The translations under genes were made by a program, and so were the position numbers. 64,000 nt of DNA, from positions 26,288,001 through 26,352,000 of the forward strand of contig NC_135667.1 in assembly GCF_964188315.1 (NCBI RefSeq), written 5' to 3'. Positions 14,801-63,209 of this stretch are shown in pieces. Origin of the DNA: Podarcis muralis. Lineage: Eukaryota. Every line of letters begins with the position of its first letter. Position 1 is the first letter of the stretch. The notes beneath the pieces were generated by a model. That model saw only the letters and a list, made by a program, of their open reading frames with translations, did no database searches and was not told the DNA's origin.

Positions 14801-15696
14801 TCATTTCCTAATTAACTGCTCCCTTTTGTTCAGCTCAGGCCTCAACAAGATAATGTAGCATTTGGGGAAGAAGATGCAAGTCAGCAACCCAGCACTGGAG
14901 GCCAAGATGGAGAAGATCTCCACAGCCACCATGTATTTCCCTTTGGTGCTCAAGTAAGTTGGAACAAAGGACAACCAAACACTGCAAAACACCAACATGC
15001 TGAAAGTGATGAACTTGGCTTCATTGAAACTGTCAGGCAAGTTCCGGGCAAAGAAAGCTACAATGAAGCTGGCCATGGCTAGCAAGCCCATGTAGCTCAG
15101 GACACAGTAAAACATGATTGGGGATGACTCGTTACATTGCAGTACAATCTGCTCAGTCATTGACTGGGCGTCAGTATCTGGGAATGGAGGAGAGGTGGAA
15201 AGCCACACCAGGCAGATGCCCGCTTGAAGAATGGAGCAAGAAAGGACAATGGAGCTGGCCAGGCTTTTTCCCACCCACTTCTTCATCCTGGATCCAGGCT
15301 GTGTAGCCATGAAAACAAGAACCACAGTGATGGTTTTGGCCAGCACAGAAGACACAGCCATTGTGAACACAAGGCCAAAGGCAGTTTGGCGCAGAAAACA
15401 TGTCACTTTGTCAGGTCTGCCAATAAATAGAAGTGCAGAAAGGAAGCAGAGTAGGAGGGAGATGAGGAGAGTGTAGGTCAGGTCCCTGTTGTTGGCTTTA
15501 ACTATGGCAGTGTCATGGTGCTTCAGAAATATTCTTAGCATCAAAACTGTGATAATGGAAAATGAAACAGCAGAAATTGTTAAACTGATTCCCAAAGGTT
15601 CTTCATAAGATAAGAAGGTTATAGTCTTGGTAATACAAGCATTCTGGCCCTTGTTTGCATATTGATCTTCTGGACATTTGGAACACACAGGCATAT
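14801..15696 (-). CDS. V2R B exon 6 (7TM)
   Basis: Within ORF 14801..15790; acceptor tttcag| at 15696. Confidence 0.95.
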
Positions 15697-18583: not shown

Positions 18584-20733
18584 CACACACACAAAAACAA
18601 ACACACACACAAAGACCATATCTGAGCATTCAAACAACCATTCAGAAAAGCTGCTGAATGGATGAAAACATGCTGGCCAACTGCTCCAAATGTGGTATGT
18701 AGAAATTAGCTGTGTAGATGGAATGGTTCCTATCATTCCCTCTTCCCCAAAATATATTGGGAAACTACACAGTGCAAAGTGAGTTCCCATCCAAATCACC
18801 ACATGGGCAGTGGGCAACAAAGAGGCAAAGAGACTGGGTGCTTATGTCAGCAAAATAGCAAATCCCAGAACCTAAATAAGAAAACAAAAAAACCTTCCTA
18901 AGAAACAATGTTTTCTTCTTAACAAACAATTCAGATGTACAATTAAAAGTCACTGAAATTAATAAAAAAAGTAGAACAAACAGCTCCTGATTCAAGTTTG
19001 GACTCTCTCACCTGCCATGGCTGATGATAGTGAAGACTCCTTCTGTCTCTCTTCATCCCTGCTTTGCTTCTGGATCTGGACAAAATCATGGCATGTAAGG
19101 CATGAGCCACAATATAGACACTATTGTAAAAGCTGTAGCTGTGGCCTGTTACACTCCTTGGGAAGACATGCTCAGGAAGGCTCTCTAGTTTCTCCTCTCC
19201 AGTGCAGGTAGATGAATAAGCTCTCCCAGAGTAATTACCCAGTACAAAAGGGTCCAGAACAATATCCTGGGATATACAGCGAAATTGATCTGTCCAGAAA
19301 TCTTTAATAAAAGTATCTCCTTCAGCATTCGAAGGGTTTCTGTTCTGAATAAAATGCTGGAATCCTTGAAGTTCATTAGACTGAAGTGCAAACGATAAAG
19401 CACCAGAGAAATCTTGGAAATCAAAGAAACCATATTCCAAGAGGTAGGTTTTTAACTCCATCCCGATAGTCAGAATGAAGACTTTTCCTTTTGGATTTGG
19501 CATTTGGGGCTTCATTTTTTGTTGTAGAAGACATCTCAAACTGATCATACTTGTAGCCTCTCCATGGAAGACGAGGACATTGGCTTTGCTGTTCATGATC
19601 TTATAAGACAAATACATTGCACTTCGGTCAAAATTTCCTTCCTCAATATCATATTCAAAACTGGTGAATGAGTCAAGGAATGCAAAACAAATGCTATGAC
19701 TGGAAAATTCTGGAATCATCTTCTCTATGAACCATTGTAACGTCATTCCATCTGCAGCAAACAATCCAATCCATCTCCATTGGAAATGGTCAAGTAATTT
19801 GAGAACCCCCCTGAACTGATCAAGTCTCTTTGGAAACATTTTGTAGAAGGAAGGGAGTTCAGGGTTCTCCAGTATGATTGAAGCCGAATCATATATGAGC
19901 TAAACATTTATTGCAGTTGTGGAAAAGAAGATTTTTTTAGTTAACATTGGTCATGCTTCTATGTTTGGGGGGGTTTGGGGACTGCAAATACATTTGTACA
20001 GTGCTGTATATCTTAATAAAAAAATGTGCATATATCTCAATGAGTTTTCAGACTTTGCAACATATTTTTTTCTTTAAATTTTTCAAGGTTCAGTAAATTC
20101 TCTAATTTTACATCAAATACAATTTTAAATCTCACATGTTATCCAGAAAATCTCAATTCACACCACTGTCTTATTAATTGAAGTCACATTAGAAGCAATC
20201 TTGCAAATTAAATTGGATTAAGATATGTAAGATACTGATGAAAAACACGATGAGATAAACTAGGGCTTTACATAAGATTCACCTGATGCTGAAGTTCCAA
20301 GGCAAATAAGGCATATTTGGAAGGACACAGGAGTTGGGCAAATCAGGTAAAGGCAACTACATATTTCTGCAGGTTTTATAACACAGAAAATTCCTTGGCT
20401 TTCATACATGGCTTCAACCCCGTATACCAGAAGGAGCGTCTCCACCCCCATTGTTAGTCTACTGAGATCCAGCTCCAAGAGTCTTCTTGTGGTTCTCTCA
20501 TTGTGGAAAGTGAGGTTCCAGGGAACCAGGAAGTGCCTTCTTAGTAATGGTGCCCGCCCTGTGTAACACCCCCCTGTCCAATGTCAAGGAACTAAACAAC
20601 TATATGAATTTTAGAATACATCTGAAACCAGTCCGTGTATAAGAAATACTTCAAAGTGTGGCATTTTACTGTAGTTTTATAATTTGCTGGAAGGCGCAGA
20701 GAGTAATTGGGGCAAACCAATCAGTTGGGTGGC

Positions 20734-27290: not shown

Positions 27291-28195
27291 TTAGTGATTT
27301 CCTCCCCTAATTAACTGCTCCCTTTTGTTCAGCTCAGGCCTCAACAAGATAATGTAGCATTTGGGAAAGAAGATGCAAGTCAGCAACCCAGCACTGGAGG
27401 CCAAGAGGGAGAAGATCTCCACAGCCACCATGTATTTCCCTTTGGTGCTCAAGTAAGTTGGAACAAAGGACATCCAAACACTGCAAAACACCAACATGCT
27501 GAAAGTGATGAACTTGGCTTCATTGAAACTGTCAGGCAAGTTCCGGGCAAAGAAAGCTACAATGAAGCTGGCCATGGCTAGCAAGCCCATGTAGCTCAGG
27601 ACACAGTAAAACATCATTGGGGATGACTCGTTACATTGCAGTACAATCTGCTCAGTCATTGACTGGGCGTCAGTATCTGGGAATGGAGGAGAGGTGGAAA
27701 GCCACACCAGGCAGATGCCCGCTTGAAGAATGGAGCAAGAAAGGACAATGGAGCTGGCCAGGCTTTTCCCCACCCACTTCTTCATCCTGGATCCAGGCTG
27801 TGTAGCCATGAAAACAAGAACCACAGTGATGGTTTTGGCCAGCACAGAAGACACAGCCATTGTGAACACAAGGCCAAAGGCAGTTTGGCGCAGAAAACAT
27901 GTCACTTTGTCAGGTCTGCCGATAAATAGGAGTGCAGAAAGGAAGCAGAGCAGGAGGGAGATGAGGAGAGTGTAGGTCAGGTCCCTGTTGTTGGCTTTAA
28001 CTATGGCAGTATCATGGTGCTTCAAAAATACTCTTAGCATCAAAACTGTGATCATGGAAAATGAGACAGCAGAAACTGTTAAACTGATACCCAAAGGTTC
28101 TTCATAAGATAAGAAGGTTATAGTCTTGGGAATACATGCATTCTGGCCCTTGTTTGCATATTGATCATCTGGACATTTGGAACACACAGGCATAT
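27291..28195 (-). CDS. V2R C exon 6 (7TM)
   Basis: Within ORF 27291..28211. Confidence 0.95.
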
Positions 28196-31100
28196 CTGAA
28201 ATGGAAAACACAAAAAAGTACCAGGTTAGAATTATTTTTAACCCTTTGCTTCTGACATGACAGGAATACAGTCATGAATAAGTAACACAAACTAGCTATA
28301 GCTGTTACTCTCAGTCAGCTACACTGCCGGTGGCACTGTGGTCTAAACCAACGAGCCACTTGTTCTGCAGTTTTAATCTGCAGAACCGGGTGAGCTCCCA
28401 TTGCTAACTCCTGCCAACCTAGCAGTTCCAAACCATACCAGCATGAGTAAAAAAGAAAAGGTAAAGCACTCACGGATGGTTAAGTCCAGCCAAAGGTTAC
28501 TATCGGGTTGCGGTGCTCATCTCGCTTTCAGGCCAAGGGTGCCAGTGTTTGTCTACAGACAGCTTTCCAGGTCATGTGGCCAGCATCACTAAACCACTTC
28601 TGGTGCAATGGAACACCATGACAGAAGCAAGAGTGCACAGAAATGCCGTTTACTTTCCAACTGCAGCAGTACTTATTTTTCTACTTGTACTGGCGTGCTT
28701 TTGACCTGCTAGGTTGGCAGGAGCAGGGAGGGAGCAATGGGAACTCACCCCGTTGTGGGCATTTGAACCACCAACCTTCCAATCGGCAAGCCCAAGAGGC
28801 TCAGTGGTTTAGACAATAGCGCCACGCACGTCTAATACGATAAATGGGTAACGCTGTAGCGGGAAGGTAAATGGTGTTTCTATGCTCTGTGGCCTCCATC
28901 ACAGTGTCCCGTTGCACCAAAAGCACTTTAGTCATTCTAGCTACATGACCCAGAAAGCTGTCTGTGGACAAACACCAGTTTCTTCATCCTGTAAGAATGA
29001 CAAACACCCTATAGTTGAATTTGAGTGCACTTAACTGTCCTGGAGTCCTTTACCTTTACAGTAGAATATGTAATAACTGAAAAATGAAATATTCTCCTTG
29101 CTTGTGTATTCACTCATGTATTCCATTCTATTTTAAATGTGCTATTACATTCAATGGCTAAAATATCAAGGGCTCATTAAAACATAGGTAGAACAAGGTG
29201 ATTTGACTGAACATTAAACTGGATGGTATGTTCATATTTCTCCCCATAATGTATTGTATTATGTAGTTCTTGTATGGACATTAGCACATATTTCCAGGCT
29301 ATCACATGGTTGTTGCAAATGTTATGGCTCTAAATGCAAAGGTTCACAAAGACACACATTCATAGGCACTACCAAATCTCATTTGAAATATGGAAGGCAC
29401 CTAACATTGCAGAGCTGGACGCATAAACTGCCATTGTCCACATAGTACTCATTAATTGCATTGGCATAATGTGCCCATTATTCTTCCTTGTATTGGGCTG
29501 TGAAATACAGAGATTCTTCTTGTATCTGTATGCTGAAACTCTCACCTTCATGATCAGATATCCACCCTTTGGGGCATACAATGCAATCATAGCAGCAGAA
29601 GGACTCCCCCTCCTTGCTTTTCTTCATATAACCGGTTGGGCACTTGGGATTACACAAAGCAACAGGCTGTGTCTATCAAGAAATGAAAGGGGCAGATGTT
29701 GATCTTCAGGAGATCTTCATTGTGCTTTCTGGCCATTTTCCTCATACACAGTCCTTTCTTTAGTCCTTTAGTTGTATGCCCTTCCCTTCCCTCCACTTTA
29801 ACTGCTGCTTATTGTCATGCGTCCAAGTTCCTGGCTTGATAACACAGTAAGCATTGTTAATTAAAAAGGAGGATTTATTGCAAAAAACAAGCAGATAGCT
29901 CCAGACAGCTGTAACATCGCCTCCAGCATCAATAATCAGGATGACCCTTCTGAAGACTGTTTCCGGTTTCTACAGAAGAAAATTTTGAACCTTGCATCTC
30001 TTGCTTTATTACTTGTCTAACAGCCCTCCCCTTAGCTGATTCTTAGAACAGATTAAATCAGCTCCAACCTCTTCCCAGTCTGACATACTACTTCCGTCCC
30101 ATTTCTTGCCTGATTGCACTTCCTGAGAGTTTTGGTTGGGTACCAGCCCGCTCTCAGTCATTCCCTTATAAATTGGCATTCCAAGGAAGTCAGCTCTCTC
30201 TGCTGTGTTCCCGGCTGCTTTCTTCAGTTTGCTGCAAACCTTCACTGGGAGCTGGCTCATTCCTGACACTTATAATGCATAAACATCAATTTTCATAATT
30301 TGGTTTTTCCATATCCATACTGCATCTGTAACACCTTCATGTTGTGTGATTCTCTCAATGTCAGTTTCTCTCAGGCATGCCATCTATGGGGGGGCAGAGA
30401 GGTCAAGAACCCTTAAAAAATCAATCATGGGGTGGGCCCCCTCAATATTCTGGAGCCAGGCAGGTGCCATCGGGCTCTGCTGCAGCTGCAACGGGCTCCT
30501 TTGGACCTCTGTTGGGCCTGCCTGTTGCTGCAATAGGCTCTGACAGGCCATGTCGGGTAGAGCGAGTTACAATAATTCAGTCTGGAGGTGACCGTCGCGT
30601 GGATCACAGTGGCTAGGTCATGGCGAGAGAGGTAGGGAGCCAACTGCTTAGCTTGACGGAGATGGAAAAATCCTGCCTTTGTTATAGCTGCAATCTGCGC
30701 CTCCCTGGAAAGGGAGGTGTCGAAGATTACACCCAAACTCTTAACGGACAGTGCTGGCACTAATTGCACCCCCGCAAGAGATGGGAGTTGCCCCCCCCCC
30801 AATCCCATATCGCCCCGTCCCAGCCACAGGACCTCTGTCTTCGAAGGATTTAGCTTCAACCGGCTCCCACGTAACCATCCAGCCACAGCTTCCAAGCATC
30901 TGGTCAGTGTGTCTGGGGCCGAGTCAGGATGGCCATCCATCAACAGATAGAGTTGGGTGTCATCGGCATACTGATGGCAACCCAGCCCAAAACTCTGAAC
31001 AAGCTGGGCGAGGGGGCGCATAAAGATGTTGAAAAGCATCGGGGAGAGTATCGCACCCAGAGGCACTCCACACACCAAGGAGTGGCGCGATGACAATTCC

Positions 31101-34100
31101 CCCCCAAGAACCACCCTCTGTCCCTGACCAGAGAGAAACGAGCGCAGCTATTGGAGGATTGTGCCCTGAATCCCCACGCCGGCAAGGCGGTGGTCCAGAA
31201 GTTCATGATCGACCATGTCGAAAGCTGCTGACAGATCTAAAAGGATCAGCAGCCCCGACCCGCCTCGATCCAGCTGTCTACGAAGATCATCTGTTAGGGA
31301 AACCAGAGCCGTCTCGGTCCCATGACCAGCGCGGAAGCCGGACTGGAATGGATCCAGAGCCGATGTTTCATCCAGAAACCCACCAAGCTGTTCAGGAACC
31401 GCTCTCTCAATCACCTTACCCAGGAACGGAAGATTCGAAACCGGGCGGTAATTGGAAAGATCTAAAGGATCTAATGATGTTTTCTTTAAGAGCGGGCGCA
31501 CCACTGCCTCCTTCAGTTCCCCTGGGAATGTCCCTGTGCCAAGGGACAAATTGATGATACCCCCCAGGATTGCACTTGGCTAAGTTGACACTTACAATAC
31601 CCAAATACCCCTTGCTGAGGGGTCAGTTGCAGCAACAGGGAGCCTCACCCCATTCACCAGCTTCTGTAACTTTCATTTACGGGCTGCATGCACACAGCTG
31701 GAGATGACACTTGCATGGTAGATGTTTCTGTTCTTCCAGCTTCAATTCTCTCCTAGTTCTGACAAACAGTGATACAGGAGAGGATAGGGAAGCACCTGGC
31801 TCTTTACTTCCCTGACCTGCTTCTTCCTCCACTTCCTTGAGTCCTTCACCCTCCAGCTCTGCAATTTCCTCAACTTAGTACCTCCTGCCTTCCTTTTCTT
31901 CCCAGTCAGACTCCAGCCCCACTTCCCCTGGTGCACACACCAGGCCCTCTTACTCACTGGAATAAGTCTGCATATGGCTGCTTTTTATTTTTGTTTAAAT
32001 GAGAGTATAATTATCATACAATGGGGAACGCTTCATGAAATCTCTCCTCCTTTTCTCCTTTCTGGTCTCCCTCCTTCAATTCTCTCCTAATTATGGGAAA
32101 CAGTGATACAGGAGAGGGTAGGGAAGCACCTGGCTCTTTACTTCTCTGGCCTGATTCTTCCTCCACTTCCTCCAGTCCTTCACCATCCAGCTCTGCAGCT
32201 TCTTCTGCCTCTTGCCTCTTGGCTGCCCTTCCTTCCCAATCAGACTCGAGCCCCACTTCCTCCACTGCACATTCATCAGTGTCATGAAACTCCCTAACAC
32301 CAACAACCCCACCCCCACCATTTATTATTTGTATCCCGCCCATTTGGCTGGCTTCCAACAAAGATTAAAAATACATTAAAATGTCACTCATTAAAAACTT
32401 CCCTAAACAGAGCTGCCTTCAGATGTCTTCTAAATGTCAGGTAGTTGTTTATCTCTTTGACATCTGTTGGGAGGGTGTTCAACAGGGTGGGTGCCACTAC
32501 CGAGAAGGCCCTCTGCCTGGTTCCCTATAGCTTTGCTTCTCGCAGTGAGGGAACTGCCAGAAGGCCCTTGGAGCTGGACCTCAGAGTCTTGGCAGAATGA
32601 TGGGGGTGGAGACGCTCCTTCAGGTATACTGGGCCGAGGCATAATATAGACATTTTTGCAAAGTAATTTCTGTCAAAAATTACAAAGCCCTATACAGCCT
32701 GTATATTTCTGTTACAAATATAAACAATCCAAAGCACACACTATGTCCTCTGACTCACTGGAATAAGTCTGCATAGGGCTGCTTTTTTATTTTTGATTGA
32801 ATAAGAGTAAAATTTTCATGCATGAAATCTCTCCTCAGAGGGTTGGAATGGTTGGAGAATGAGCAACAGGCAAGGACAAAATTGTGCAGAGGGTTGGGCT
32901 TTGAACAAAAGACTCACTCTCATTGAGAACTGGGACACTTCCCAAATATCTGCATTGAAGTCCTACCTGATTAAACCAGCTGTGCCACACTATGGCTTCC
33001 TCATTGATGCTCAAGAGTTCGTCAGGAGGAGCTCGGGGATCCATCCTTCCAACTTTCACTCTCTTGAAAGATTGGTTTGGATATGTGACCAAATTGATAA
33101 TGTCATACTTTTGAATGAACTCCCCATTCTGGTCAAAGGAAATCTTCTCCCCAACACTGTTGTTAAATGACACAGCTTTCAAAAAATGATAGAGCTGGAA
33201 CAAAAAACAGAAAAGGGAGCCAGATAAAGTTGGGTGTCATCAGCATAATGAGGACAGCCCAGCCCGAAGTTCTGAACACGCTGGGCAAGAGAGCGCATGT
33301 ATACAATAATATATATACAATACAAAACTATGTATATTATGTATACAAATAAGACCTTAGGATAAGAATACGAAGCAATAGGTAAAAAAGGAATAAAGTA
33401 AATAATCAAATCAGGACATCATATCAGTGTACAGCTAGATTTGAAACAGTGGTAGAGCAGGGAGAGGAATATATATATTTTAAAAAATAATATCAGAAAA
33501 TTAATAAAAATTGAAGGAAGGAAAAGAAATAAAAATAAAAATAAACCGCCATTAATACCCTCATATATAGGTTGCACCATATATATATCACATAGACCCT
33601 TTTATTTCTTCCATCTCTCCATTTCTTTTTCACACAGCCCACATACAAACATTTCTCTCTCTCTCTCTCTCTCCCTCTCTGGCCAAATATATGTTGCTCG
33701 CAAAGACAACACTTGAGCTCACAAAAAAATATTAAGAAAAATTGCTCAGCCTTGTACTTCTTAACTATAGGGAATGAAGGCAACGCAGAAGTGGACAATT
33801 GCACAGGATCAATCTAAAAAGTGTCTCCAGCAGATGAATCGTTCTTCCTGCTAACTTGACCTGGAGATGTAATATTGCTGTTCTTGAACTTGGAGAACTA
33901 TAGTGCCGAAGTTTTGGTGAGACCAGGGCTCCCTCTCTCCATTATAGTACAAAGCTGAGGGACACAGCTGAGTCTCCTTAATTAAAGCAGCACCTCACAA
34001 TGTGGGTGAGACCAACAATTCAGATGAAGCTGTTGCTACTATAAAAGACGTAGTCTCCTAATATTTCTTGCTAATGCAACATTACAGCACTGTTTGAGTC

Positions 34101-37100
34101 TGAAAACACACACCATCTACATCCCTCAAACATCCCACTCTTTCTCATGTGCCCTTTCACATTCCCCTCTCTTTATTTCTATTTCACAAACCAATATGCC
34201 TTCACATATACAGTTAAATGTCAATGGAATTAATAATAAAAGCAGAGCAACCAGTCCCTGATTCACATTTGGATACTCTTACCTGCCATGGCTGATGATT
34301 ATGAAGCTTCCTTCTTTCTCTCTTCATCCCTGCTTTGCTTCTGGATCTGGATGAAATCATGGCATGTAAGGCATGAGCCACAACATAGACACTATTGTAA
34401 AAGCTGTAGCTGTGGCCTGTTACACTCCTTGGGAAGACGTGCTCAGGAAGGCTCTCTAGTTTCTCCTCTCCAGTGCAGGGAGATGAATAAGCTCTCCCAG
34501 AGTAATTACCCAGTACAAAAGGGTCCAGAACAATATCCTGGGATATACAGCGAAATTGATCTGTCCAGAAATCTTTAATGAAACTATCTCCTTTAGCGTT
34601 AGAAGGGTTTCTGTTCTGAATAAAGTGTTGGAATCCTTGAAGTTCATTAGACTGAAGTGCAAATGATAAAGCACCAGAGAAATCTTGTATATCAAAGATA
34701 CGATTGAAGAGGTAGGTTTTTAACTCCATCCCTATTGTCAGAATGAAGACTTTTCCTTTTGGATTTGGCATTTTGGGCTTGATTCTTTGTTGTAGAAGAC
34801 ATCTCAAAAACATCATTTTTGTAACCTCTCCATGGAAGACGAGGACATTGGCTTTGCTGTTTATGATCTTAGCAGACAAATACATTGCACTTCGGTCAAA
34901 ATTTCCTTTCTCAATATCATATTCAAAACTGGTGAATGAGTCAAGAAATGCAAAACAAATGCTATGACTGGAAAATTCTGGAACCATCTTCTGTATGAAC
35001 CATTGTAAAGTCATTCCATCTGTAGCAAATAATCCAATCCACCTCCATTGGAAATAGTCAAGTAATTTGAGAATCCCCTTGAACTGATCAAGTCTCTTTG
35101 GGACCATTTTGTAGAATGAAGGGAGGTCAGTGTTCTCCAGTATGACTGAAGCAGAATCATATATGAGCTAAACAAATATTGCAGGTGTGGAAACAGTTTA
35201 GTTTAGTTTAGTTTACATTGGTGGTGCTTCTATGTTTGGGGGCGGGGTGGAACTGCAAACACATTTGTACAGTGCTGTATTTCTTAATAAAACATCATGT
35301 ATATATCTCAATCATTGTTCGTACTTTGTACTTTTTTTTGAAGATTTTCAAGGTCCCACTAAATTTTACATCAAACATAATTTTAAATCTTACATGTTAT
35401 CCAGAAAATCTCAAATCACATCACTGTCTTATTAATTGAAATCACATTAGAAGCAACCTTGCAAATTAAGTTAGATTGAGATAATTATAATTCTGATGAA
35501 AAACATGATGAAATATAAAAATATATTTTAAAAAATTAATTTGTAATGGACCCAAAACCACTTCTAAAATGGAAAGCAGTATTCACATTGTATATATTTC
35601 TTCTGTTTCCATACACACATAAACTCTTACCTGAGGAATCTTGTAGATAGCAAAAATTTGTGGTATGGGAAAGTAGGAATTAGTAACATCCGCAGTGATT
35701 GTCAATAAATTTTCATGGATACCACACATAAAGTTGGGGAGGAGTCTGTCCTTTGGTGAAATAAATTGCATTGCAGCAGGAGAGGTCCACCTAGCTTGCA
35801 AAGTGTTATCATATATATTGAATCCCAGTGAAATATTAGGTAAAATCTGGGGATTTTCATTAACCTCCTTTACCGCAAAAGCCAAAGCCAAAAGATGCTG
35901 ATAGTTCTCTGTCACTCCACTACAAAGAGAGTTGCATATTGTGTCACAAGTATATCCTGCTCTTTCTGAAGCTGTTATTTTCTAAAGTGGCAACCCTATC
36001 GCAAGATCCCCTTGGATGAGCATCTTAGAATACAGCAGATCTGTGAGTCAGAGGGCTGCTTCCTGTCTCAGCTGTCTCATCCTAGCTGAGCCTTGGCTGA
36101 GGTGGCTGAGTTGAAGCTGGCTGAGCTGAGGGTCGCTGAGCTGAAGCTGAAAAAATCGTCATTCTAGAGGTATGAGGGCAGAATCAAAGTGGGGGCTAGT
36201 TAGGATAGTCCACTAAGAGACATTACCTGGCAAGCCTAGAGGCAGATTTGGGGCATCTCAACAGGTTCAGTTGTACTGCACATGGAGCCGGTGTGTGTGC
36301 TGCAACAATGAAGTATAATGGAAGGTGAGAGGCTGAGGGTGCCCATGAAATCTGAGACCCCAAAATCCACCACAGACCAGGCTTAGTCCAAGAAGCAGCA
36401 GCAGCTCTGCTGCTGAACGTGGCTTGGATGTGGTGCATCTTTACCTCAGCTTAATTCACACTGCCCTGCTCTCATCCAGTTTATTGTGCATATGAGTGGT
36501 CACCCCCCCAAAAAAAATTAGTTATTGTGCTTCATTACTATATATTATGTTCTTATACAAGAGTAAGGCAAAGCTACCATATCAATATCACCACCATCAT
36601 TTTATGTGTATGCCTTTCCCTAGTTAAAACCATGCTCAAGGCAGCTTACAGTACAGAATCCTACAGAAACCTCATGTGTAATCTACTCCACAGGCATCTC
36701 TGGGTGGTCTCAAAGCACCAGCATTCTGGTTAAGTCATGATGAACAAATAAAATACATCAAAAATTACCAAACTGAAATAATTTCCAAAGAAATCAGACA
36801 AAGATCTGATTCATAAGCAGATTGAAAGATGAAAATTCAAAATAAATAAATAAATAACATGAATAAATAAACGAAACAGCCCAACAAAAAATGCTAAACA
36901 AAGACCCCAGCCCAAGGGTCTGTTCAGCAGCTTTTGTAGCTGAGGTCAGTCAGTCACTCAGTAGGGCACTGCCCTCCCAGGCCTGATGGGTAAAAGGCCT
37001 GTATGGAAAGGAGCAGATCATCCAGGACTTGCAAGCAAGATTGTCTCCGGGCAAGGACATATTTAATTCCTATATTGAATAACTGCAAACATACCCAATG

Positions 37101-52985: not shown

Positions 52986-53640
52986 ACGAGATTATTTTCT
53001 TTTGAAGGCTTTGGCATGTTTCATTCTTAGTACACTCCTCATGATTGATACTAAATTATTTCTTGGACAATAATTTTTCAAGTTTGATGCATTTCTTAAG
53101 GAACAATCCTACCAAAGGTTGGCACTTATAAATCCTATTTTTAATAAAGAAAATGATGATTATATGAATTGCGTTTTCAGTGAAATCGTTCAATGATTAT
53201 TAAAATAAAACTTCCCCATATTAAGAAGACATGGAAGCTATAGGCATAATTTATTATAAGATCACTTTTAAATCCTATTGATTTCAGTTAAATACTTTAT
53301 TCTATTCTAGCACTGAAAACTGATGTAGCCAGATCACCTATTTATAATATAAAATTTACATGAGATAACAGTAGTTAAAAACATGTCATCTACTTATATT
53401 CCACTCATTCTTCAAAGAGTTCATGAAAGCTTAAATATAATGCATAGAAGGTATAATATTAAGACAATGCTAGAAACAGAACGGAGTAACTTCTGTTTTA
53501 GAACTATGCTATGTGACTTTGGATCATTCCCTGATCTGCTAGGCACTCTTATAACAGAGTTCCATATATACACTATATAAAAAGATTTTGTAGAACCAAT
53601 CATATCCTAAATTCATGTTCAAGTATGTTCTTTTTCCAGG

Positions 53641-54594
53641 ATGCAGAACAGAAAAGAACACATTCTACAAAACAGTACAACACCAGCTCAATTCATCCTC
53701 CTGGGTCTTTCTGATGATCCAAACCTGCAAAGTGCATTATTCTTCACTTTCCTGGCACTTTATATCATCACTCTGACAGGAAACCTTCTCATCATTCTTC
53801 TGACATTGGTTGACTCTGCCCTCCACACTCCCATGTATTTCTTCCTAAGAAACCTGTCTTTTCTGGAGATCTGCTACACATCAGTCAATGTCCCTAAGAT
53901 GCTGTCAAACCTCCATTCTGGAAATAAATCCATCTCCTTCATCGGATGTGCTCTGCAGACCTACTTTGATTTCTTCCTTGGTGGGTCAGAATGTTTCCTC
54001 TTGACCTCAATGGCCTATGATCGATATGTAGCCATTTGTAAGCCCTTACACTACCACGTCCTGATGAGCCAAAAAGTTTATATTACTTTAGCTGTGGCAT
54101 CTTGGTTAAGTGGGTTTCTGATGTCCTTTGGTCACACAAGCATGGTGTTTACTGTCTCCTACTGTGGCTCAAATGTGATAAACCACTTTGTCTGTGACAT
54201 CCCTCCTTTGCTGAAATTGGCTTGTGGGGACACCTCAAGGGTTGAAATTGCAGTCTTTGTGGTGGCTATGATTTTTGTGACTTTTCCTTTTATCCTGATC
54301 TTGATGTCTTATGCGGGCATTATAACCACCATTGTGAAGATCTCGTCCTCTGAAGGTCGGAAGAAGACCTTCTCCACCTGCTCTTCACACCTCATTGTGG
54401 TGACCTTGTTCTATGGTTCTGCTTGTATTACATATTTGAAGCCCAATTCCACTTACTCACCAAACACTGACAAATTTCTCTCCCTTTTCTATACGGTTAT
54501 CGGTCCCATTTTGAACCCCCTCATATACAGCTTGAGGAATAAAGAGGTAAAGGGTGCCTTTAAAAGAATTTGGGATAGAAGACCTTTTGGGTGA
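53641..54594 (+). CDS. Olfactory receptor OR-3 (class II, family-10-like), 317 aa
   Basis: LHTPMYFFL, MAYDRYVAIC, STCSSHL, PILNPLIYSLRNKEV; NST sequon; tttttccag|G ATG. Confidence 0.95.
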   Translation: MQNRKEHILQNSTTPAQFILLGLSDDPNLQSALFFTFLALYIITLTGNLLIILLTLVDSALHTPMYFFLRNLSFLEICYTSVNVPKMLSNLHSGNKSISFIGCALQTYFDFFLGGSECFLLTSMAYDRYVAICKPLHYHVLMSQKVYITLAVASWLSGFLMSFGHTSMVFTVSYCGSNVINHFVCDIPPLLKLACGDTSRVEIAVFVVAMIFVTFPFILILMSYAGIITTIVKISSSEGRKKTFSTCSSHLIVVTLFYGSACITYLKPNSTYSPNTDKFLSLFYTVIGPILNPLIYSLRNKEVKGAFKRIWDRRPFG

Positions 54595-55178: not shown

Positions 55179-55907
55179 TATTGGGGAATGGATGGAAAAC
55201 TATGGGGGGAAGTAGGAATCATCCTTGATTAAGCTTGGAACCTAATATAACTTAATGTGAAGGTCATTCTCTGACAGAAAATTTCCTGTCCCTTCATCCC
55301 CCACATGCTTTGTTTGGAAAAGGTCCCATGTTCAGTCCTGGCAGGGCTGGGAAAGATTTTTTCCCCTGAAACTCTGGGGAACTTCTGCCAAGCTGCATTC
55401 AGAGGTGGGGTTTATTGCATGAGTTTTTACGGTTATAATGCTAGTGCTTCTGTCCCAATTTCTAACATTGCTTTTGCACTGCAATAGCAGCTGCATTCCA
55501 GAACTGTGGGTTTTTTTTATTTAAAAAATTGCTAAAATGCTGAACTACATTTTAACTGCCAGGAAAGAATTATATGCAGGGATACTGCCCACATTTTGTC
55601 ACATTAACTCACAATGCAATAATTCCCTCTCTTTGGACTTCTCCTAGCATGCTTCTGTTCCAGAGGTGTTTTCATTTGTCTATTTCAGCCAGTACAAAGA
55701 ACCCCAAATCCACCTTTCTTCTGCATTGATTTCCAAAATTTGCAGAGACTAAATTAGCATTGATTGACGTCTCCCTGGTTACTGACTGCCTTGTGATTGT
55801 CTGGACAATATAATTCAAGACCTACCTGGATCAAACTTCTTGGAATTGAACTGTTGCCATATAGCCCATTGTCTCTCACCATCCCTCATATTACTTGACC
55901 ATCATAG

Positions 55908-58900
55908 ATAGATAGATAGATAGATAAATTTATTGTCATTGTCCGTATATACACTGTATACACAACAACGAAAATCAAACACCCACCCAAAGACCGGGTT
56001 CACATACACATTTGCACGTATCTCCATCACTCTCATCCTATTCAGACATAATCTATAAAAACATAACATAATCCAGAATATAACATAACCTATTAAAGGC
56101 ATAACATAACCTAAAACCTATCTCATTCCTTCCTACTCCCTGCTTGCTATTCCTTGCAGCTGGCCCTGAGATCATTATTTAGTGCAATCAGAGCTCTTGG
56201 ATAGAAACTATTCAGAAGGCGTGTGGTTCGTGTTTTCATTGTCCTATATCTTCTGCCCGAAGGCAACAGTTCAAAGAAGTTGTGAGCAGGATGGGTGGGA
56301 TCTCTCAGGATATTGTGTGACTTCTTCAAAGTGCGAGACGTGAAGATCTCATCCAGGGTTGGTAGTTGGAGCCCAATAAAATTCTGGGCAATTTTAATTA
56401 TTCTCTGTAAAGCTTTTTTATCCGTTTCAGAGCTGCTCCCATACCACGATAATATACTATAGGTTAAGACACTCTCGATGGTACTGTGATAATAGGACAG
56501 AAGTAGGTGCTGAGATAGATTCAGTCCCCTGAGCATTCTCAGGAAATACAACCTCCCCTGCACCTTCCTCACAACCATATTAATATTTGCAGTCCATGAG
56601 AGGTCCTCAGAGATATAAATGCCCAGGTATTTAAAACTACCAACCCTCTCCACCTCCTCGCCATTTATGTGCAATGGTAAAAATACACTTTTCTTTCTCC
56701 TAAAGTCAATTATGAGTTCTTTGGTTTTTTTGGTGTTAAGCATAAGATTGTTTTCTTTACACCATTGAATTAACCCCTGTACTTCTTTCCTATAAGCAGT
56801 CTCATCGTTCTCACTAATGAGCCCCACCACTGTTGTATCATCCGCAAATTTGATGATTGTGTTGGACTTATACAGTGGGGTGCAATCAAATGTGTACAGG
56901 GAATAGAGAAATGGGCTTAGCACACATCCCTGAGGGGCTCCTGTGCTTAATACTAGAGTAGAAGAATAGTAAGGTCCCATTCTCACTGTCTGCGGCCTAT
57001 CAGTCAGGAAATTCCTTACCCACAGACAGATCTTCTGATGTATACCCAAATTGGTCATTTTAAGAAATAACCTGTCTGGCAGAATTGTATTGAAGGCAGA
57101 ACTGTAGTCCACAAACAACAGCCTTGCGTAGGTTCCCTGTCGTTCTAGATGACTCAGTACAGTATGGACAGCGATGGAAATAGCATCATCAGTAGATCTG
57201 TTTCTTCTGTATGCAAACTGGAACGGGTCTAGAGTGGATGGAAGACCAGCCTTAATATGATCTAGCACCAATCTCTCAAAACATTTCATAACAACAGATG
57301 TTAGGGCTATTGGTCTATAGTCATTGAGAGATACCACCACTGACTGCTTGGGAACTGGCACTATAATCGATGTCTTCAGGCAGGTAGGGACAGAACCCTG
57401 CAACAGGGATAGGTTAAAAATGTCCGTAAATACACCAGCTAATTCTGCAGCGCAGTCCCTAATAACCCGTCCCATGATTCCATCCGGTCCAGCTGCCTTC
57501 CTAATGTTAATGCTCCGAAAGGCACGTTGTACGTCACAGGTCTGTAATAAAAATGGTTGTCTATCAGTAGTAGTTTCTGATGATGTGCTGGTAGCCAATG
57601 CTGTAGTGACGGTAGTTCCAGTTCCCTCCTCAAAGCGACTAAAAAATTGATTCAGTTGATCAGCCAGGTGCGCACTGCTGCTAGCCAGTTCGTTTTTAAT
57701 ATTTTGCCCTGTAATTTGTCGCAGGCCTTGCCATACTCGACGAGGGTCGGAGCTCTCAAAATGTTTTTCGATCCTCCGGCAGTACATAGCTTTGGCGTTC
57801 CTAATGCCCTTTTTCAATTTGGCTCTGGCTTCTCTATACTGTTGCGCATCACCAGAGTGAAAAGCAGCATTTCTTGCCTTTAACAGAAGATACACATCCC
57901 TGTTTAGCCAGGGCTTGTTGTTAGGGAACACCCGTATTTGTTTGGTGGTAGTGACAACATCAATGCAGCTTTTAACGTAAAACAGTACTGTTGAAGCGTA
58001 TGTGTCCACATTATTCTCCACAAAAAGCGACCACTCGGTGCTCCGAAAGCAATCTTGAAGTTGCTCAGATGCACCTACTGGCCACACTCGTATCTCTCTA
58101 GTTGATGGTCTAATTCTGCGTACGAGAGGTCTATATGATGGTATCATAAGTAAAGATATGTGGTCTGACTGCCCCAAATTGGGCAAGGGCTTGGTCTTGT
58201 ATCCATGCATGATGTTACTATATACTTGGTCCAGGGTATTTCCCCCCCTAGTGGGACAATCAACATATTGGTGGAACTTAGGGAGCACAGTCCTTAAATC
58301 GGCTCGGTTAAAATCACCAGCAACCACAAATGCTCCATCCGGGTGGGCCCGCTGCTGTCTGCTAATAGCAGTTAGCAGGTGGCCCATAGCTGTAGTAGTG
58401 TTTGCATCGGGAGGTATATACACCGCTGTTATTATAACAACATTAAACTCACGTGGCAAATAAAAAGGGCGGCACTTCACCACTAGGTACTCCAAGTCAG
58501 GAGAGCAATGCGTGTCCATTTGTTTAATGTCCGAGCTCCAGTTGTTATTTATATAAACGCAAATTCCTCCTCCTCTGCTCTTCCCGGATTCGGCGGTTCT
58601 ATCCGCTCTAATTACTGAGCGTCCTTCTAGCTGCAGAAGTCCCTGTGGAAAGGAGGGATCCAGCCACGTCTCTAGAAGGACCATAACACAGCAGTCCCGG
58701 ATACTTTTCTGCCGAGAGGTAATAAGTTCCAACTCCTCTACCTTGTTGGGTAAGGATCTCACATTTGATACAAGGAGACTTGGCAATGCAGGCTTGTGGG
58801 GATTTTTACCTAGCCTCACTCGTAGTCCAGCCCTGCAACCCCTCTTCTGCTTGCGCCCTCTCCGTTTTCTTTTCTTTCTGGCAAGGAGAGCAAGGGGAGT

Positions 58901-59155
58901 ATCCCAAGAATGTGCAAGATATGGAGGCTCTCTGATAAGCTCAGCTGGAATGTTATAGGTTGAGACCTCCTGGCTGCAACCTTCTCCTCTGCCGATACTT
59001 AAGAGCTCTTGACGACTATAAATTACTTGTGCCTGAGTATTCACAGTCCATAGCAGCAATAAGTTCACAAATAAAAATAAAACACAAATCACTGAATACC
59101 GGTCTTCGGAGTGCCGAGCCGCTGCAAGTGCTTGCGCCGCCATCTTGCTCCTCCA
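55908..59155 (-). mobile_element. Apparently full-length non-LTR retrotransposon, Rex1/Babar-type LINE
   Basis: Single long APE-RT ORF. 3' end ...ACAATGACAATAAA followed by a (TCTA)n tail. 5' end GGAGGAGCAAGATGGCGG. Candidate 5-bp TSD catag at 55903-55907 and 59156-59160. Confidence 0.85.
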
Positions 59156-59158
59156 CAT
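56147..59158 (-). CDS. LINE ORF: apurinic endonuclease + reverse transcriptase (1003 aa; 998 aa from the more likely Met at 59143)
   Basis: APE motifs SNVRS, LETW, GDFN, DQVY, SDH; RT motifs QFAYR, DYSSAFNTI, GAPQGCVLSP, KFADD; C-terminal LLPSGRRYR...RLLNSFYP typical of Rex1/Babar; no stops or frameshifts. Confidence 0.92.
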   Translation of the reverse strand: MWRSKMAAQALAAARHSEDRYSVICVLFLFVNLLLLWTVNTQAQVIYSRQELLSIGRGEGCSQEVSTYNIPAELIREPPYLAHSWDTPLALLARKKRKRRGRKQKRGCRAGLRVRLGKNPHKPALPSLLVSNVRSLPNKVEELELITSRQKSIRDCCVMVLLETWLDPSFPQGLLQLEGRSVIRADRTAESGKSRGGGICVYINNNWSSDIKQMDTHCSPDLEYLVVKCRPFYLPREFNVVIITAVYIPPDANTTTAMGHLLTAISRQQRAHPDGAFVVAGDFNRADLRTVLPKFHQYVDCPTRGGNTLDQVYSNIMHGYKTKPLPNLGQSDHISLLMIPSYRPLVRRIRPSTREIRVWPVGASEQLQDCFRSTEWSLFVENNVDTYASTVLFYVKSCIDVVTTTKQIRVFPNNKPWLNRDVYLLLKARNAAFHSGDAQQYREARAKLKKGIRNAKAMYCRRIEKHFESSDPRRVWQGLRQITGQNIKNELASSSAHLADQLNQFFSRFEEGTGTTVTTALATSTSSETTTDRQPFLLQTCDVQRAFRSINIRKAAGPDGIMGRVIRDCAAELAGVFTDIFNLSLLQGSVPTCLKTSIIVPVPKQSVVVSLNDYRPIALTSVVMKCFERLVLDHIKAGLPSTLDPFQFAYRRNRSTDDAISIAVHTVLSHLERQGTYARLLFVDYSSAFNTILPDRLFLKMTNLGIHQKICLWVRNFLTDRPQTVRMGPYYSSTLVLSTGAPQGCVLSPFLYSLYTFDCTPLYKSNTIIKFADDTTVVGLISENDETAYRKEVQGLIQWCKENNLMLNTKKTKELIIDFRRKKSVFLPLHINGEEVERVGSFKYLGIYISEDLSWTANINMVVRKVQGRLYFLRMLRGLNLSQHLLLSYYHSTIESVLTYSILSWYGSSSETDKKALQRIIKIAQNFIGLQLPTLDEIFTSRTLKKSHNILRDPTHPAHNFFELLPSGRRYRTMKTRTTRLLNSFYPRALIALNNDLRASCKE

Positions 59159-59559
59159 AGACCCTCCACATTTCCCTTTTTTACAGGGATAGCCCTGGAT
59201 TTACAGAAGCTGTCTCAGTTTTTGATTCAATCTCAGAATATCCCACTTTTTCTTAGGATGTCCCTATTTTCATTGGAGAACTTTTGGAGGTATGGAGTTA
59301 GGCAAACCCTGAGCCAAGGAGATAAGTAACTATACAGCCTTTGAAGGCAACCTTGAATAGGGAAGGTTTATTTAAATGATTAATGTTTTATTATGTTTTT
59401 ATATATGTTTGAAGCCACACAGAGTGGAAGGGGCAAGCCTGTTAGATGGGCAGGGGATTGATAATAACAATAACAATAATAACAGGGTGTCCTTGTTTTC
59501 ATTGGAGACATGTTGGAAGGTCTGCAATCAATGCTGCTACTTTCCACAGAATTAGACCC

Positions 59560-60250: not shown

Positions 60251-60609
60251 NNNNNNNNNNNNNNNNNNNNNNNNNNNNNNNNNNNNNNNNNNNNNNNNNN
60301 NNNNNNNNNNNNNNNNNNNNNNNNNNNNNNNNNNNNNNNNNNNNNNNNNNNNNNNNNNNNNNNNNNNNNNNNNNNNNNNNNNNNNNNNNNNNNNNNNNNN
60401 NNNNNNNNNNNNNNNNNNNNNNNNNNNNNNNNNNNNNNNNNNNNNNNNNNNNNNNNNNNNNNNNNNNNNNNNNNNNNNNNNNNNNNNNNNNNNNNNNNNN
60501 NNNNNNNNNNNNNNNNNNNNNNNNNNNNNNNNNNNNNNNNNNNNNNNNNNNNNNNNNNNNNNNNNNNNNNNNNNNNNNNNNNNNNNNNNNNNNNNNNNNN
60601 NNNNNNNNN
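60251..60609. other. Assembly gap (359 N)
   Basis: Run of N. Confidence 0.99.
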
Positions 60610-62255: not shown

Positions 62256-63209
62256 ATGCAGAACAGAAAAGAATACATTCTACAAAACAGTACAACACCA
62301 GCTCAATTCATCCTCCTGGGTCTTTCTGATGATCCCAACCTGCAAAGTGCATTATTCTCCACTTTCCTGGTACTCTATATCCTCACTCTGGCAGGAAACC
62401 TTCTCATCATTCTTCTGACATTGGCTGACCCTGCCCTCCACACCCCCATGTATTTCTTCCTAAGAAACCTGTCTTTTCTGGAGATCTGCTACACATCAGT
62501 CAATGTCCCTAAGATGCTGGCAAACCTCCTTTCTGGAAATAAATCCATCTCATTCATCGGATGTGCTCTGCAGACCTACTTTATATTCTTCCTTGGTGGG
62601 TCAGAATGTTTCCTTTTGGCCGCAATGGCCTATGATCGATATGTTGCCATATGTAAGCCCTTACACTACCACGTCCTGATGAGCCAAAAGGTTTATACTA
62701 CTTTAGCTGTGGCATCTTGGTTAAGTGGGTTTCTGATGTCCTTTGGTCACACCACCATGATGTTTACTCTCTCCTATTGTGGCTCCAATGTGATTAACCA
62801 CTTCTTTTGTGACATCCCTCCTTTGCTGAAATTGGCTTGTGGGGACACCTCAAGGGTTGAAATTGCAGTCTTTGTGGCGACTATGATCTTTGGGACTTTG
62901 CCTTTTATCCTGATCTTGATGTCTTATGCTGGCATTATAACCACCATTTTGAAGATCTCATCCTCTGAAGGTCGGAAGAAAACCTTTTCCACCTGCTCTT
63001 CACATCTCATTGTGGTGACCTTCTTCTATGGTTCTGCTTGTATTACATATTTGAAGCCCAATTCCACTTACTCACCAAACACTGACAAATTTCTCTCCCT
63101 TTTCTATACTGTTATCGGTCCCATTTTGAACCCCCTCATATACAGCTTGAGGAATAAAGAGGTAAAGGGTGCCTTTAAAAGAATTTGGGATAGAAGACCC
63201 TTTCGGTGA
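62256..63209 (+). CDS. Olfactory receptor OR-4, 317 aa, recent paralogue of OR-3
   Basis: Same motifs as OR-3; about 24 aa differences by hand alignment; flanks homologous. Confidence 0.95.
   Translation: MQNRKEYILQNSTTPAQFILLGLSDDPNLQSALFSTFLVLYILTLAGNLLIILLTLADPALHTPMYFFLRNLSFLEICYTSVNVPKMLANLLSGNKSISFIGCALQTYFIFFLGGSECFLLAAMAYDRYVAICKPLHYHVLMSQKVYTTLAVASWLSGFLMSFGHTTMMFTLSYCGSNVINHFFCDIPPLLKLACGDTSRVEIAVFVATMIFGTLPFILILMSYAGIITTILKISSSEGRKKTFSTCSSHLIVVTFFYGSACITYLKPNSTYSPNTDKFLSLFYTVIGPILNPLIYSLRNKEVKGAFKRIWDRRPFR

What the first reader, a model, noticed from the sequence alone, without database searches (positions are those of the whole stretch)
53968..53970. OR-3 has Asp at TM3 position 3.32, the aminergic/TAAR amine-binding site; its twin has Ile
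Seen: counting from C103 (3.25) and the R128 of DRY (3.50), residue 110 is 3.32. OR-3 has GAT (Asp); OR-4 has ATA (Ile, 62583-62585), so all three codon positions differ. OR-1 has Leu and OR-2 has Tyr there. Known: D3.32 is the amine counter-ion in aminergic GPCRs and most TAARs, and 3.32 lines the OR pocket. Inference: possible convergent evolution of an amine-detecting OR just after duplication.
Basis: partly seen in the sequence, partly recalled or inferred. Interest (0 to 1): 0.75.

Follow-up and report, generated by a model that had tools for sequence, protein, structure and literature searches.

The report
Lizard odorant receptors with pocket aspartate
A wall-lizard smell receptor really does carry the negatively charged residue that amine receptors use to hold their ligands, but the residue is old, shared with other lizard copies and kept by selection, and whether it senses amines is still untested.

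Summary
Confirmed: OR-3 (53641-54594, +) has GAT = Asp at residue 110, which is position 3.32. OR-4 has ATA (Ile), OR-1 Leu and OR-2 Tyr. Contigs from two further studies and from a second organism show no other letter there.

"Just after duplication" is wrong. The P. raffonei locus has the same D(GAT)/I(ATA) pair. A second Podarcis copy just past the window and a Zootoca copy also carry GAT. Sceloporus (GAC) and the gecko Heteronotia (GAT) have Asp too. OR-3 orthologs give dN/dS 0.15.

Trees built without this codon reject a single Asp clade. So either Asp arose at least four times, or it has been kept while gene conversion homogenised the rest of the gene. In Heteronotia, 3 of the 14 differences between two paralogs fall in this one codon (P about 0.001).

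Position 3.32 is the most changeable site in the seven-helix core of this squamate OR10A-like subfamily. Asp or Glu is absent there in 185 other OR TM3 variants.

The receptor is a class II OR, not a TAAR. Published OR5K1 work places 3.32 in the odorant pocket. An anionic anchor for a basic odorant is the leading reading (about 0.4), but it is untested. I could not measure side-chain orientation and have no expression data.

The parts
53641..54594 (+). OR-3: intact single-exon class II odorant receptor gene (317 aa), OR10A7-like squamate subfamily
   Evidence: ORF. Pfam 7tm_4 E 1.3e-53. Motifs LHTPMY, MAYDRY, KTFSTCSSHL, NPLIYSLRN and an N11-S-T glycosylation site. 55-56% identical to solved class II ORs with a gapless TM3 alignment. 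AF2 model pLDDT 83.6, TM-score 0.92 to 9le0. Ortholog dN/dS 0.15.
53968..53970 (+). Codon 110, GAT = Asp at Ballesteros-Weinstein position 3.32
   Evidence: No alternative letter in contigs of X1, X2 and X18. The same codon is present in the P. raffonei ortholog.
53630..53640 (+). Pyrimidine tract plus CAG immediately before the ATG: likely 3' splice acceptor joining an upstream non-coding exon (inferred)
   Evidence: Sequence. The same arrangement sits before OR-4's ATG. Public gene models of orthologs carry upstream exons. No RNA evidence here.
62256..63209 (+). OR-4: adjacent paralog (317 aa), 95% nt and 92% aa identical to OR-3
   Evidence: Identical to P0001. Its P. raffonei ortholog has the same Ile codon.
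62583..62585 (+). OR-4 codon 110, ATA = Ile at 3.32
48497..49489 (+). OR-2: more distant OR just upstream. Tyr (TAT, 48833-48835) at 3.32. It serves as the synteny anchor of the array in Podarcis, Lacerta and Heteronotia
42265..43263 (-). OR-1: more distant OR. Leu (CTT, 42934-42936) at 3.32

Best explanation
OR-3 is a functional class II odorant receptor of a squamate-specific OR10A-like tandem array. In this array, pocket position 3.32 is the main ligand-tuning site.

The Asp state is not a fresh post-duplication novelty. It is an older state kept by selection. It is shared by the P. raffonei ortholog, a second Podarcis paralog and a Zootoca paralog, and it is also found in an iguanian and a gecko. 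It either arose repeatedly or was preserved while gene conversion homogenised the rest of the genes.

Mechanistically (inferred), the carboxylate points into the odorant cavity. There it gives an otherwise hydrophobic class II pocket an ionic or hydrogen-bond anchor for a basic odorant, with protonated volatile amines the leading candidates. It would then work like D3.32 of TAARs and aminergic receptors, and like the mirror image of R6.59 in acid-sensing class I ORs, without being a TAAR.

Shown: presence, conservation, recurrence, rarity and constraint. Inferred: pocket orientation and ligand class.
For: - The codon and the numbering are confirmed.
- The gene is intact and constrained: OR-3 Pmur-Praf dS 0.076, dN 0.011, omega 0.15.
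- Asp is shared by OR-3, P0002, P0123, P0131, P0126, P0024 and P0028. Codons are GAT in lacertids and the gecko, GAC in Sceloporus.
- The only sites fixed between lacertid Asp and non-Asp copies are nt 329-330 of this codon.
- Trees built without the codon need 4-5 changes for Asp. AU tests reject one Asp clade: lacertids p 3e-9, all Asp copies p 3e-43.
- In the Heteronotia D and T paralogs, 3 of 14 differences lie in this codon (P 0.0009). CDS dS is 0.012 against about 6% flank divergence.
- Residue 110 ranks 4th of 317 for parsimony changes and 1st within the 7TM core, between nearly invariant neighbours.
- No Asp or Glu at 3.32 in 133 representative OR domains, or in 185 distinct non-subfamily TM3 variants.
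- Position 3.32 lies in the generalised OR pocket, and mutating it shifts OR5K1 EC50.
- Asp3.32 is required for amine agonism in TAARs.
- Class II ORs normally lack an ionic anchor.
- Anolis has only 3 TAARs.
Against: - No ligand, expression or mutagenesis data exist for any of these receptors.
- The aminergic partners W7.40 and Y7.43 are F283 and V286 here. There is no D5.42 (V208).
- The solved OR pocket described is built mainly from TM3, TM5, TM6, TM7 and ECL2, so 3.32 may sit at its edge.
- Position 3.32 is hypervariable in this subfamily (T, A, S, V, I, F, D). Asp may be just one more tuning state, and a buried Asp may be protonated.
- No second residue co-varies with Asp.
- Lacerta agilis has Ile at the positional ortholog and no Asp copy among its three array genes.
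Confidence: 0.42

Rival explanations
1. Asp at 3.32 is simply one more tuning state of a hypervariable pocket position. It would be neutral (protonated) or act as a hydrogen-bond partner for non-amine polar odorants such as alcohols, carbonyls or N/S-heterocycles. This would extend the hydrogen-bonding role of the ancestral Thr/Ser rather than create an amine receptor.
For: The commonest states in the subfamily are Thr, Ser and Ala. The site changes 24 times on the tree. In consOR1 a single polar residue, N109 at 3x37, hydrogen-bonds menthol in an otherwise hydrophobic pocket. No aminergic partner residues and no co-varying site were found.
Against: Asp or Glu is absent at 3.32 in 185 other OR TM3 variants. 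Yet within this subfamily it recurs or persists through 2-3 nucleotide differences in one codon. That pattern suggests a distinct selected function. In other GPCR families D3.32 goes with cationic ligands.
Confidence: 0.3
2. Asp at 3.32 acts within the receptor rather than on the ligand. It could pair with a nearby Lys or His, or sit above conserved E3.39. The effect would be on basal activity, folding, trafficking or ion or metal binding.
For: Positions 3.32 and 3.39 (E117) are seven residues apart, so they lie on the same helix face (sequence). K267 and K278 are nearly invariant in the subfamily. Pocket residues can set OR basal activity, as at 3x37 in consOR51.
Against: The Lys and His residues are equally conserved in copies without Asp, and nothing co-varies with Asp. 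The variability pattern of site 110 is that of a specificity site.
Confidence: 0.12
3. The Asp is an assembly or collapse artefact, or a neutral or slightly deleterious change in a gene drifting towards pseudogenisation.
For: The supporting contigs are short and partly shared among paralogs, and one run has no cover at the codon. There are no RNA data.
Against: GAT is present in independent assemblies of P. raffonei and Zootoca and in a second P. muralis copy. No alternative letter appears in X1, X2 or X18. The ORF is intact with all OR motifs. Ortholog omega is 0.15.
Confidence: 0.04

Closest known systems
Trace amine-associated receptors and aminergic GPCRs (Asp3.32 counter-ion)
   Same: Asp at the same TM3 position, in the same class A fold. 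In TAARs this residue is essential for amine agonism.
   Different: OR-3 is an odorant receptor by sequence and fold: 7tm_4, 55-56% identity to class II ORs and about 18% to TAAR1 structures. It lacks W7.40, Y7.43 and D5.42. No ligand is known.
Class I odorant receptors with R6.59 (OR51E2, consOR51, OR52c)
   Same: A charged pocket residue would give an OR an ionic anchor for a charged odorant class.
   Different: The charge is opposite, the helix differs (TM6 against TM3) and the OR class differs. R6.59 is conserved across class I, whereas Asp3.32 here is a minority state inside one squamate class II subfamily.
Human OR5K1 (L104 at 3.32) and the 22-position generalised OR pocket
   Same: Same position in a class II OR. 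It is predicted to contact the ligand, and the Ala mutant shifts EC50. It is conserved among orthologs.
   Different: Leu there contacts alkyl groups of pyrazines. It is not a charged residue.
Teleost clade III TAARs (Asp5.42 instead of Asp3.32)
   Same: A precedent that olfactory GPCRs gain, lose and relocate a single Asp to change amine recognition.
   Different: That happened inside the TAAR family. Here an Asp appears in the OR family.
Mouse MOR256-17 (Olfr15), a broadly tuned OR that also responds to TAAR ligands
   Same: Shows that canonical ORs can respond to amines (cited).
   Different: It is broadly tuned, and no Asp3.32 is reported for it. I did not check its sequence here.

Membership tests
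Vertebrate class II odorant receptors (Pfam 7tm_4) | Significant match to the OR-specific profile | tested here: met
   PF13853 7tm_4, E 1.3e-53, 183 bits against a cutoff of 27.
Vertebrate class II odorant receptors (Pfam 7tm_4) | OR signature motifs: LHTPMY (TM2), MAYDRY (TM3), KxFSTCxSHL (TM6), NPxIYSLRN (TM7), plus C3.25 and ECL2 cysteines | tested here: met
   All are present in OR-3. Cysteines at 103, 175, 185 and 195.
Vertebrate class II odorant receptors (Pfam 7tm_4) | Closest solved structures are class II ORs rather than class I ORs or other GPCRs | tested here: met
   bmOR6A2, consOR5 and consOR2 at E 1e-107 to 1e-108, against OR51E2 at 6e-40. Foldseek TM 0.92 and rmsd 1.5 to 9le0.
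Vertebrate class II odorant receptors (Pfam 7tm_4) | Expression in olfactory sensory neurons and odorant-evoked signalling | not tested
   No RNA holder was found.
TAAR / aminergic receptor family | Asp at 3.32 | tested here: met
   D110.
TAAR / aminergic receptor family | Aminergic/TAAR TM7 partners W7.40 and Y7.43 (from established knowledge of these families) | tested here: not met
   Numbering from N292-P293 gives F283 at 7.40 and V286 at 7.43.
TAAR / aminergic receptor family | Sequence membership: closest relatives are TAARs or biogenic amine receptors | tested here: not met
   All close relatives are ORs. TAAR1 structures match only as generic class A folds at about 18% identity.
TAAR / aminergic receptor family | Activation by amines that depends on the Asp | not testable with these tools
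   Needs heterologous expression and mutagenesis.
Squamate OR10A7-like subfamily (TM3 pattern C-A-x-Q-T-Y-F-x-F-F-L-G-G-S-E-C) | Falls inside the well-supported squamate clade and shares its TM3 pattern | tested here: met
   Lacertid clade 100/99. Squamate clade 98/90 and 99/95. TM3 strings.

The most novel reading that the evidence does not exclude
A squamate-specific lineage of canonical class II odorant receptors has acquired the aminergic Asp3.32 independently of TAARs and uses it to detect volatile amines. Selection has held this single codon in place, or recreated it, across geckos, iguanians and lacertids, while gene conversion repeatedly homogenised the surrounding gene. This may compensate for the very small TAAR repertoire of squamates.
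Probability: 0.25. Interest if true: 0.8.

Novelty: new variant of a known kind. Interest (0 to 1): 0.6.

Why it matters
Class II ORs are thought to recognise odorants through diffuse hydrophobic contacts with no conserved ionic anchor. Amines are assigned to the separate TAAR family. A set of canonical ORs carrying a selected Asp at 3.32, in animals with only about three TAARs, would be a second, convergent route to amine or base detection in vertebrate olfaction. It also comes with natural one-residue swap pairs for testing how a single pocket residue sets ligand class: the D/I, D/V and D/T paralogs, which are 92-98% identical. Separately, the pattern of one codon staying different while the rest of the gene is homogenised is a clean example of selection resisting gene conversion in a chemoreceptor array.

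Tried and rejected
1. A single ancient Asp clade. This is rejected for the sequence outside the codon. The protein tree needs 4-5 changes. AU tests give p 3e-9 for lacertids and p 3e-43 for all Asp copies; Podarcis alone is borderline at p 0.045.
2. Linked variants diagnostic of Asp copies around codon 110. None exist. Only nt 329-330 are fixed.
3. Residues co-varying with Asp, such as a compensating base or a second acid. Nothing recurs across lineages.
4. Literature on ORs with Asp3.32 or OR-based amine anchors. Five searches found only TAAR work and OR5K1 L104 at 3.32. The consOR paper does not mention 3x32 in its text.
5. Measuring D110 orientation. The AF2 model was built, but its coordinates are not exposed to scripts, so there is no distance or cavity measurement. 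The residue-frequency logos in the OR5K1 supplement are images.
6. Reads. Only Logan contigs were available for the DNA runs, and X9 lacks cover at the codon.
7. The look-up of Zootoca protein P0134 failed because it is not on record.
8. A whole-repertoire frequency of Asp3.32 across squamate ORs could not be computed. The estimate rests on 133 representative domains and 185 distinct TM3 strings near this family.

Full report
**Observation**

The window holds four intact odorant receptor ORFs:
- OR-1, 42265-43263 (-)
- OR-2, 48497-49489 (+)
- OR-3, 53641-54594 (+)
- OR-4, 62256-63209 (+)

All four match Pfam 7tm_4.

In OR-3 the conserved Cys is residue 103 and the Arg of MAYDRY is residue 128. 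Residue 110 is therefore position 3.32. Its codon, 53968-53970, reads GAT. OR-4 has ATA at 62583-62585, OR-1 has CTT (Leu) and OR-2 has TAT (Tyr). OR-3 and OR-4 differ at 48 of 954 nt and 24 of 317 residues. Three differences landing in any one codon has a chance of 0.039.

**Reads**

Only Logan contigs were available for the DNA runs. Runs X1 and X2 (two studies, organism A) and X18 (organism B) cover the codon and list no alternative letter at 53968-53970. X9 has no cover there. The contigs are short, and several carry variants typical of other paralogs. They show GAT in this context in several individuals, not specifically at the OR-3 locus. The better independent support is the collinear P. 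raffonei locus, from another assembly, which also reads GAT. No RNA holder was found.

**What the gene is**

The nearest proteins are 'olfactory receptor 10A7-like' of Podarcis muralis, P. raffonei, Lacerta agilis and Zootoca vivipara. Other squamates follow at 75-84% identity. The window's own proteins sit on the same 59.6 Mb P. muralis record.

OR-3 has all the OR motifs and an N-terminal glycosylation site. A pyrimidine tract plus CAG lies directly before the ATG, as expected for an OR coding exon.

The closest solved structures are class II ORs (bmOR6A2, consOR5, consOR2) at 55-56% identity. The TM3 alignment to them is gapless, which fixes the register of 3.32. An AF2 model (pLDDT 83.6) superposes on 9le0 with TM-score 0.92 and rmsd 1.5 A. 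TAAR1 structures match only as generic class A folds, at about 18% identity.

**Asp is not private to OR-3**

Within this squamate subfamily (74 sequences in the tree), position 3.32 is Thr in 28, Ala in 10-11 (tallies), Ile in 10, Val in 8, Asp in 7, Ser in 7, Leu in 2 and Phe in 1.

The Asp copies are:
- OR-3
- a second P. muralis copy, P0002
- two P. raffonei copies, P0123 and P0131
- one Zootoca copy, P0126
- one Sceloporus copy, P0024
- one Heteronotia copy, P0028

The P. raffonei locus is collinear with the window. It reads OR-2 (TAT), then the OR-3 ortholog (GAT), then the OR-4 ortholog (ATA). The array continues about 50 nt past the window's end. The next genes carry Ile (ATA), Asp (GAT, P0002), Val (GTA) and Val (GTA).

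**Timing**

| Comparison | dS | dN/dS |
|---|---|---|
| OR-3, P. muralis vs P. raffonei orthologs | 0.076 | 0.15 |
| OR-4, P. muralis vs P. raffonei orthologs | 0.051 | 0.27 |
| OR-3 vs OR-4 (within either species) | 0.109-0.130 | 0.25-0.33 |

The D/I difference therefore predates the split of the two Podarcis species, and OR-3 has been under purifying selection since. 'Just after duplication' does not hold.

**Recurrent origin or maintained codon**

A careful protein tree built without column 3.32 places each Asp copy among non-Asp copies of its own lineage:
- Heteronotia Asp sits inside a Heteronotia Thr clade (100/100).
- Sceloporus Asp sits inside an iguanian Thr/Ala clade.
- Zootoca Asp sits inside a Zootoca Val clade (100/98).
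- OR-3 pairs only with its P. raffonei ortholog (100/98).

Asp needs 5 changes on this tree, and at least 4 are forced by starred branches. A DNA tree gives genus-specific clusters. AU tests reject a single Asp clade for lacertids (p 3e-9) and for all Asp copies (p 3e-43). Podarcis alone is borderline (p 0.045).

Yet all lacertid Asp copies use GAT. Their Val and Ile relatives use GTA and ATA, which are two and three steps away. Nucleotides 329-330 are the only sites fixed between Asp and non-Asp lacertid copies.

In Heteronotia, the Asp copy and its Thr sister differ at only 14 of 933 nt, and three of those are this codon (GAT against ACA). The chance of that is 0.0009. Their CDS dS is 0.012, while the flanks are about 6% diverged and a 2.3 kb block around the CDS is 97.2% identical. 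This points to recent gene conversion.

Paralogs within Podarcis (dS about 0.11) are closer to each other than OR-3 is to its positional ortholog in Lacerta agilis (dS 0.147). That ortholog is collinear over 4.4 kb at 90.9% identity and carries Ile (ATA).

Two models remain:
- At least four independent multi-nucleotide origins of Asp.
- An older Asp codon protected by selection while conversion homogenised everything else.

I lean towards the second within families, but I cannot decide between them. Either model requires selection on Asp at 3.32.

Lacerta agilis has only three array copies, all Ile. Asp has therefore been lost there or never arrived.

**Position 3.32 as the tuning site**

On the subfamily tree, residue 110 takes 24 parsimony steps. 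It ranks 4th of 317 positions, and the three higher ones lie in the N- and C-terminal tails. Its neighbours Y108, F109, F112, L113, G114 and G115 are invariant or nearly so.

OR-3 and OR-4 also differ at 5.42, 5.43 and 5.47. No position co-varies with Asp across lineages.

**Rarity**

A scan of 1.84 billion cluster representatives returned 148 OR proteins, which contain 133 TM3 domains. At 3.32 these have Phe 78, Tyr 14, Leu 9, Ser 9, Val 9, Ile 6, Ala 3, His 3, Met 1 and Gly 1, with no Asp or Glu.

Pooling everything fetched, 185 distinct TM3 strings from outside the subfamily have no Asp or Glu at 3.32. Inside the subfamily, 5 of 61 have Asp. This sample is drawn from ORs close to this family. 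It is not a full-repertoire census.

**Does 3.32 face the ligand?**

I could not measure this, because model coordinates are not exposed. The case rests on published work:
- In OR5K1, L104 at 3.32 lies in the pocket in both AF2 and homology models. L104A raises the EC50. The position is one of the 22 generalised OR pocket positions and has been identified experimentally in several receptors.
- Solved OR pockets are built from TM3, TM5, TM6, TM7 and ECL2.
- Class II ORs normally have no ionic anchor.
- In TAARs, neutralising Asp3.32 abolishes amine responses.

Against a simple transfer of the TAAR mechanism, OR-3 has F283 at 7.40, V286 at 7.43 and V208 at 5.42.

**Mechanism and rivals**

- **Best reading (0.42).** The carboxylate is a selected pocket anchor for a basic odorant, with volatile amines the first candidates. 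Squamates having few TAARs makes this ecologically plausible; Anolis has 3.
- **Rival 1 (0.30).** Asp is one more polar tuning state for non-amine ligands, possibly protonated.
- **Rival 2 (0.12).** Asp acts within the receptor, affecting basal activity or folding.
- **Rival 3 (0.04).** The Asp is an artefact or the product of drift. Independent assemblies and an ortholog dN/dS of 0.15 contradict this.

**Novelty and limits**

I found no paper describing ORs with Asp3.32. I file this as a new variant of a known kind: a canonical class II OR carrying the aminergic anchor residue.

Nothing here shows ligand binding, expression or side-chain geometry. The N runs at 49637-49781 and 60251-60609 were left untouched.

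Noticed in passing
window 129-35107 (-): Three tandem copies of a V2R-type vomeronasal receptor. Their 7tm_3 exons lie at 129-1031, 14801-15790 and 27291-28211. ANF_receptor ligand-domain exons lie at 7157-8053, 18943-19839 and 34214-35107. The OR array therefore abuts a V2R array.
   Followed up: partly
window 56147-59158 (-): An uninterrupted 1003-aa LINE ORF lies between OR-3 and OR-4, with endonuclease, reverse transcriptase and an ALKBH8_N-like match. The surrounding stretch of about 3.9 kb (roughly 55450-59350) has no counterpart at the collinear P. raffonei locus. It looks like a young, possibly still active insertion.
   Followed up: partly
L005:10001-10933 and L007:10001-10954 (Heteronotia binoei): Two paralogs 31 kb apart differ at 14 of 933 nt, and three of those are the 3.32 codon (GAT against ACA). 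CDS dS is 0.012 and dN 0.016, while the flanks are about 6% diverged. This is a signature of gene conversion with one codon held apart.
   Followed up: yes
L006:10001-10954 (Lacerta agilis): The positional ortholog of OR-3 is collinear with OR-2 and 4.4 kb of surrounding sequence. It carries Ile (ATA). All three array copies in this species are Ile.
   Followed up: yes
window 53866-53868 (OR-3 residue E76) and the whole subfamily: Position 2.50 is Glu (LSFLEICY). From memory it is Asp in most ORs and class A GPCRs. It is nearly invariant in the subfamily alignment.
   Followed up: no
window 48497-49489: OR-2 has no ATG at the usual distance from TM1. The mechanical ORF starts at TTG and the first in-frame Met gives only 283 aa.
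   Followed up: no
window 30425-31114 (-): A reverse-transcriptase fragment (RVT_1) lies inside the V2R array.
   Followed up: no
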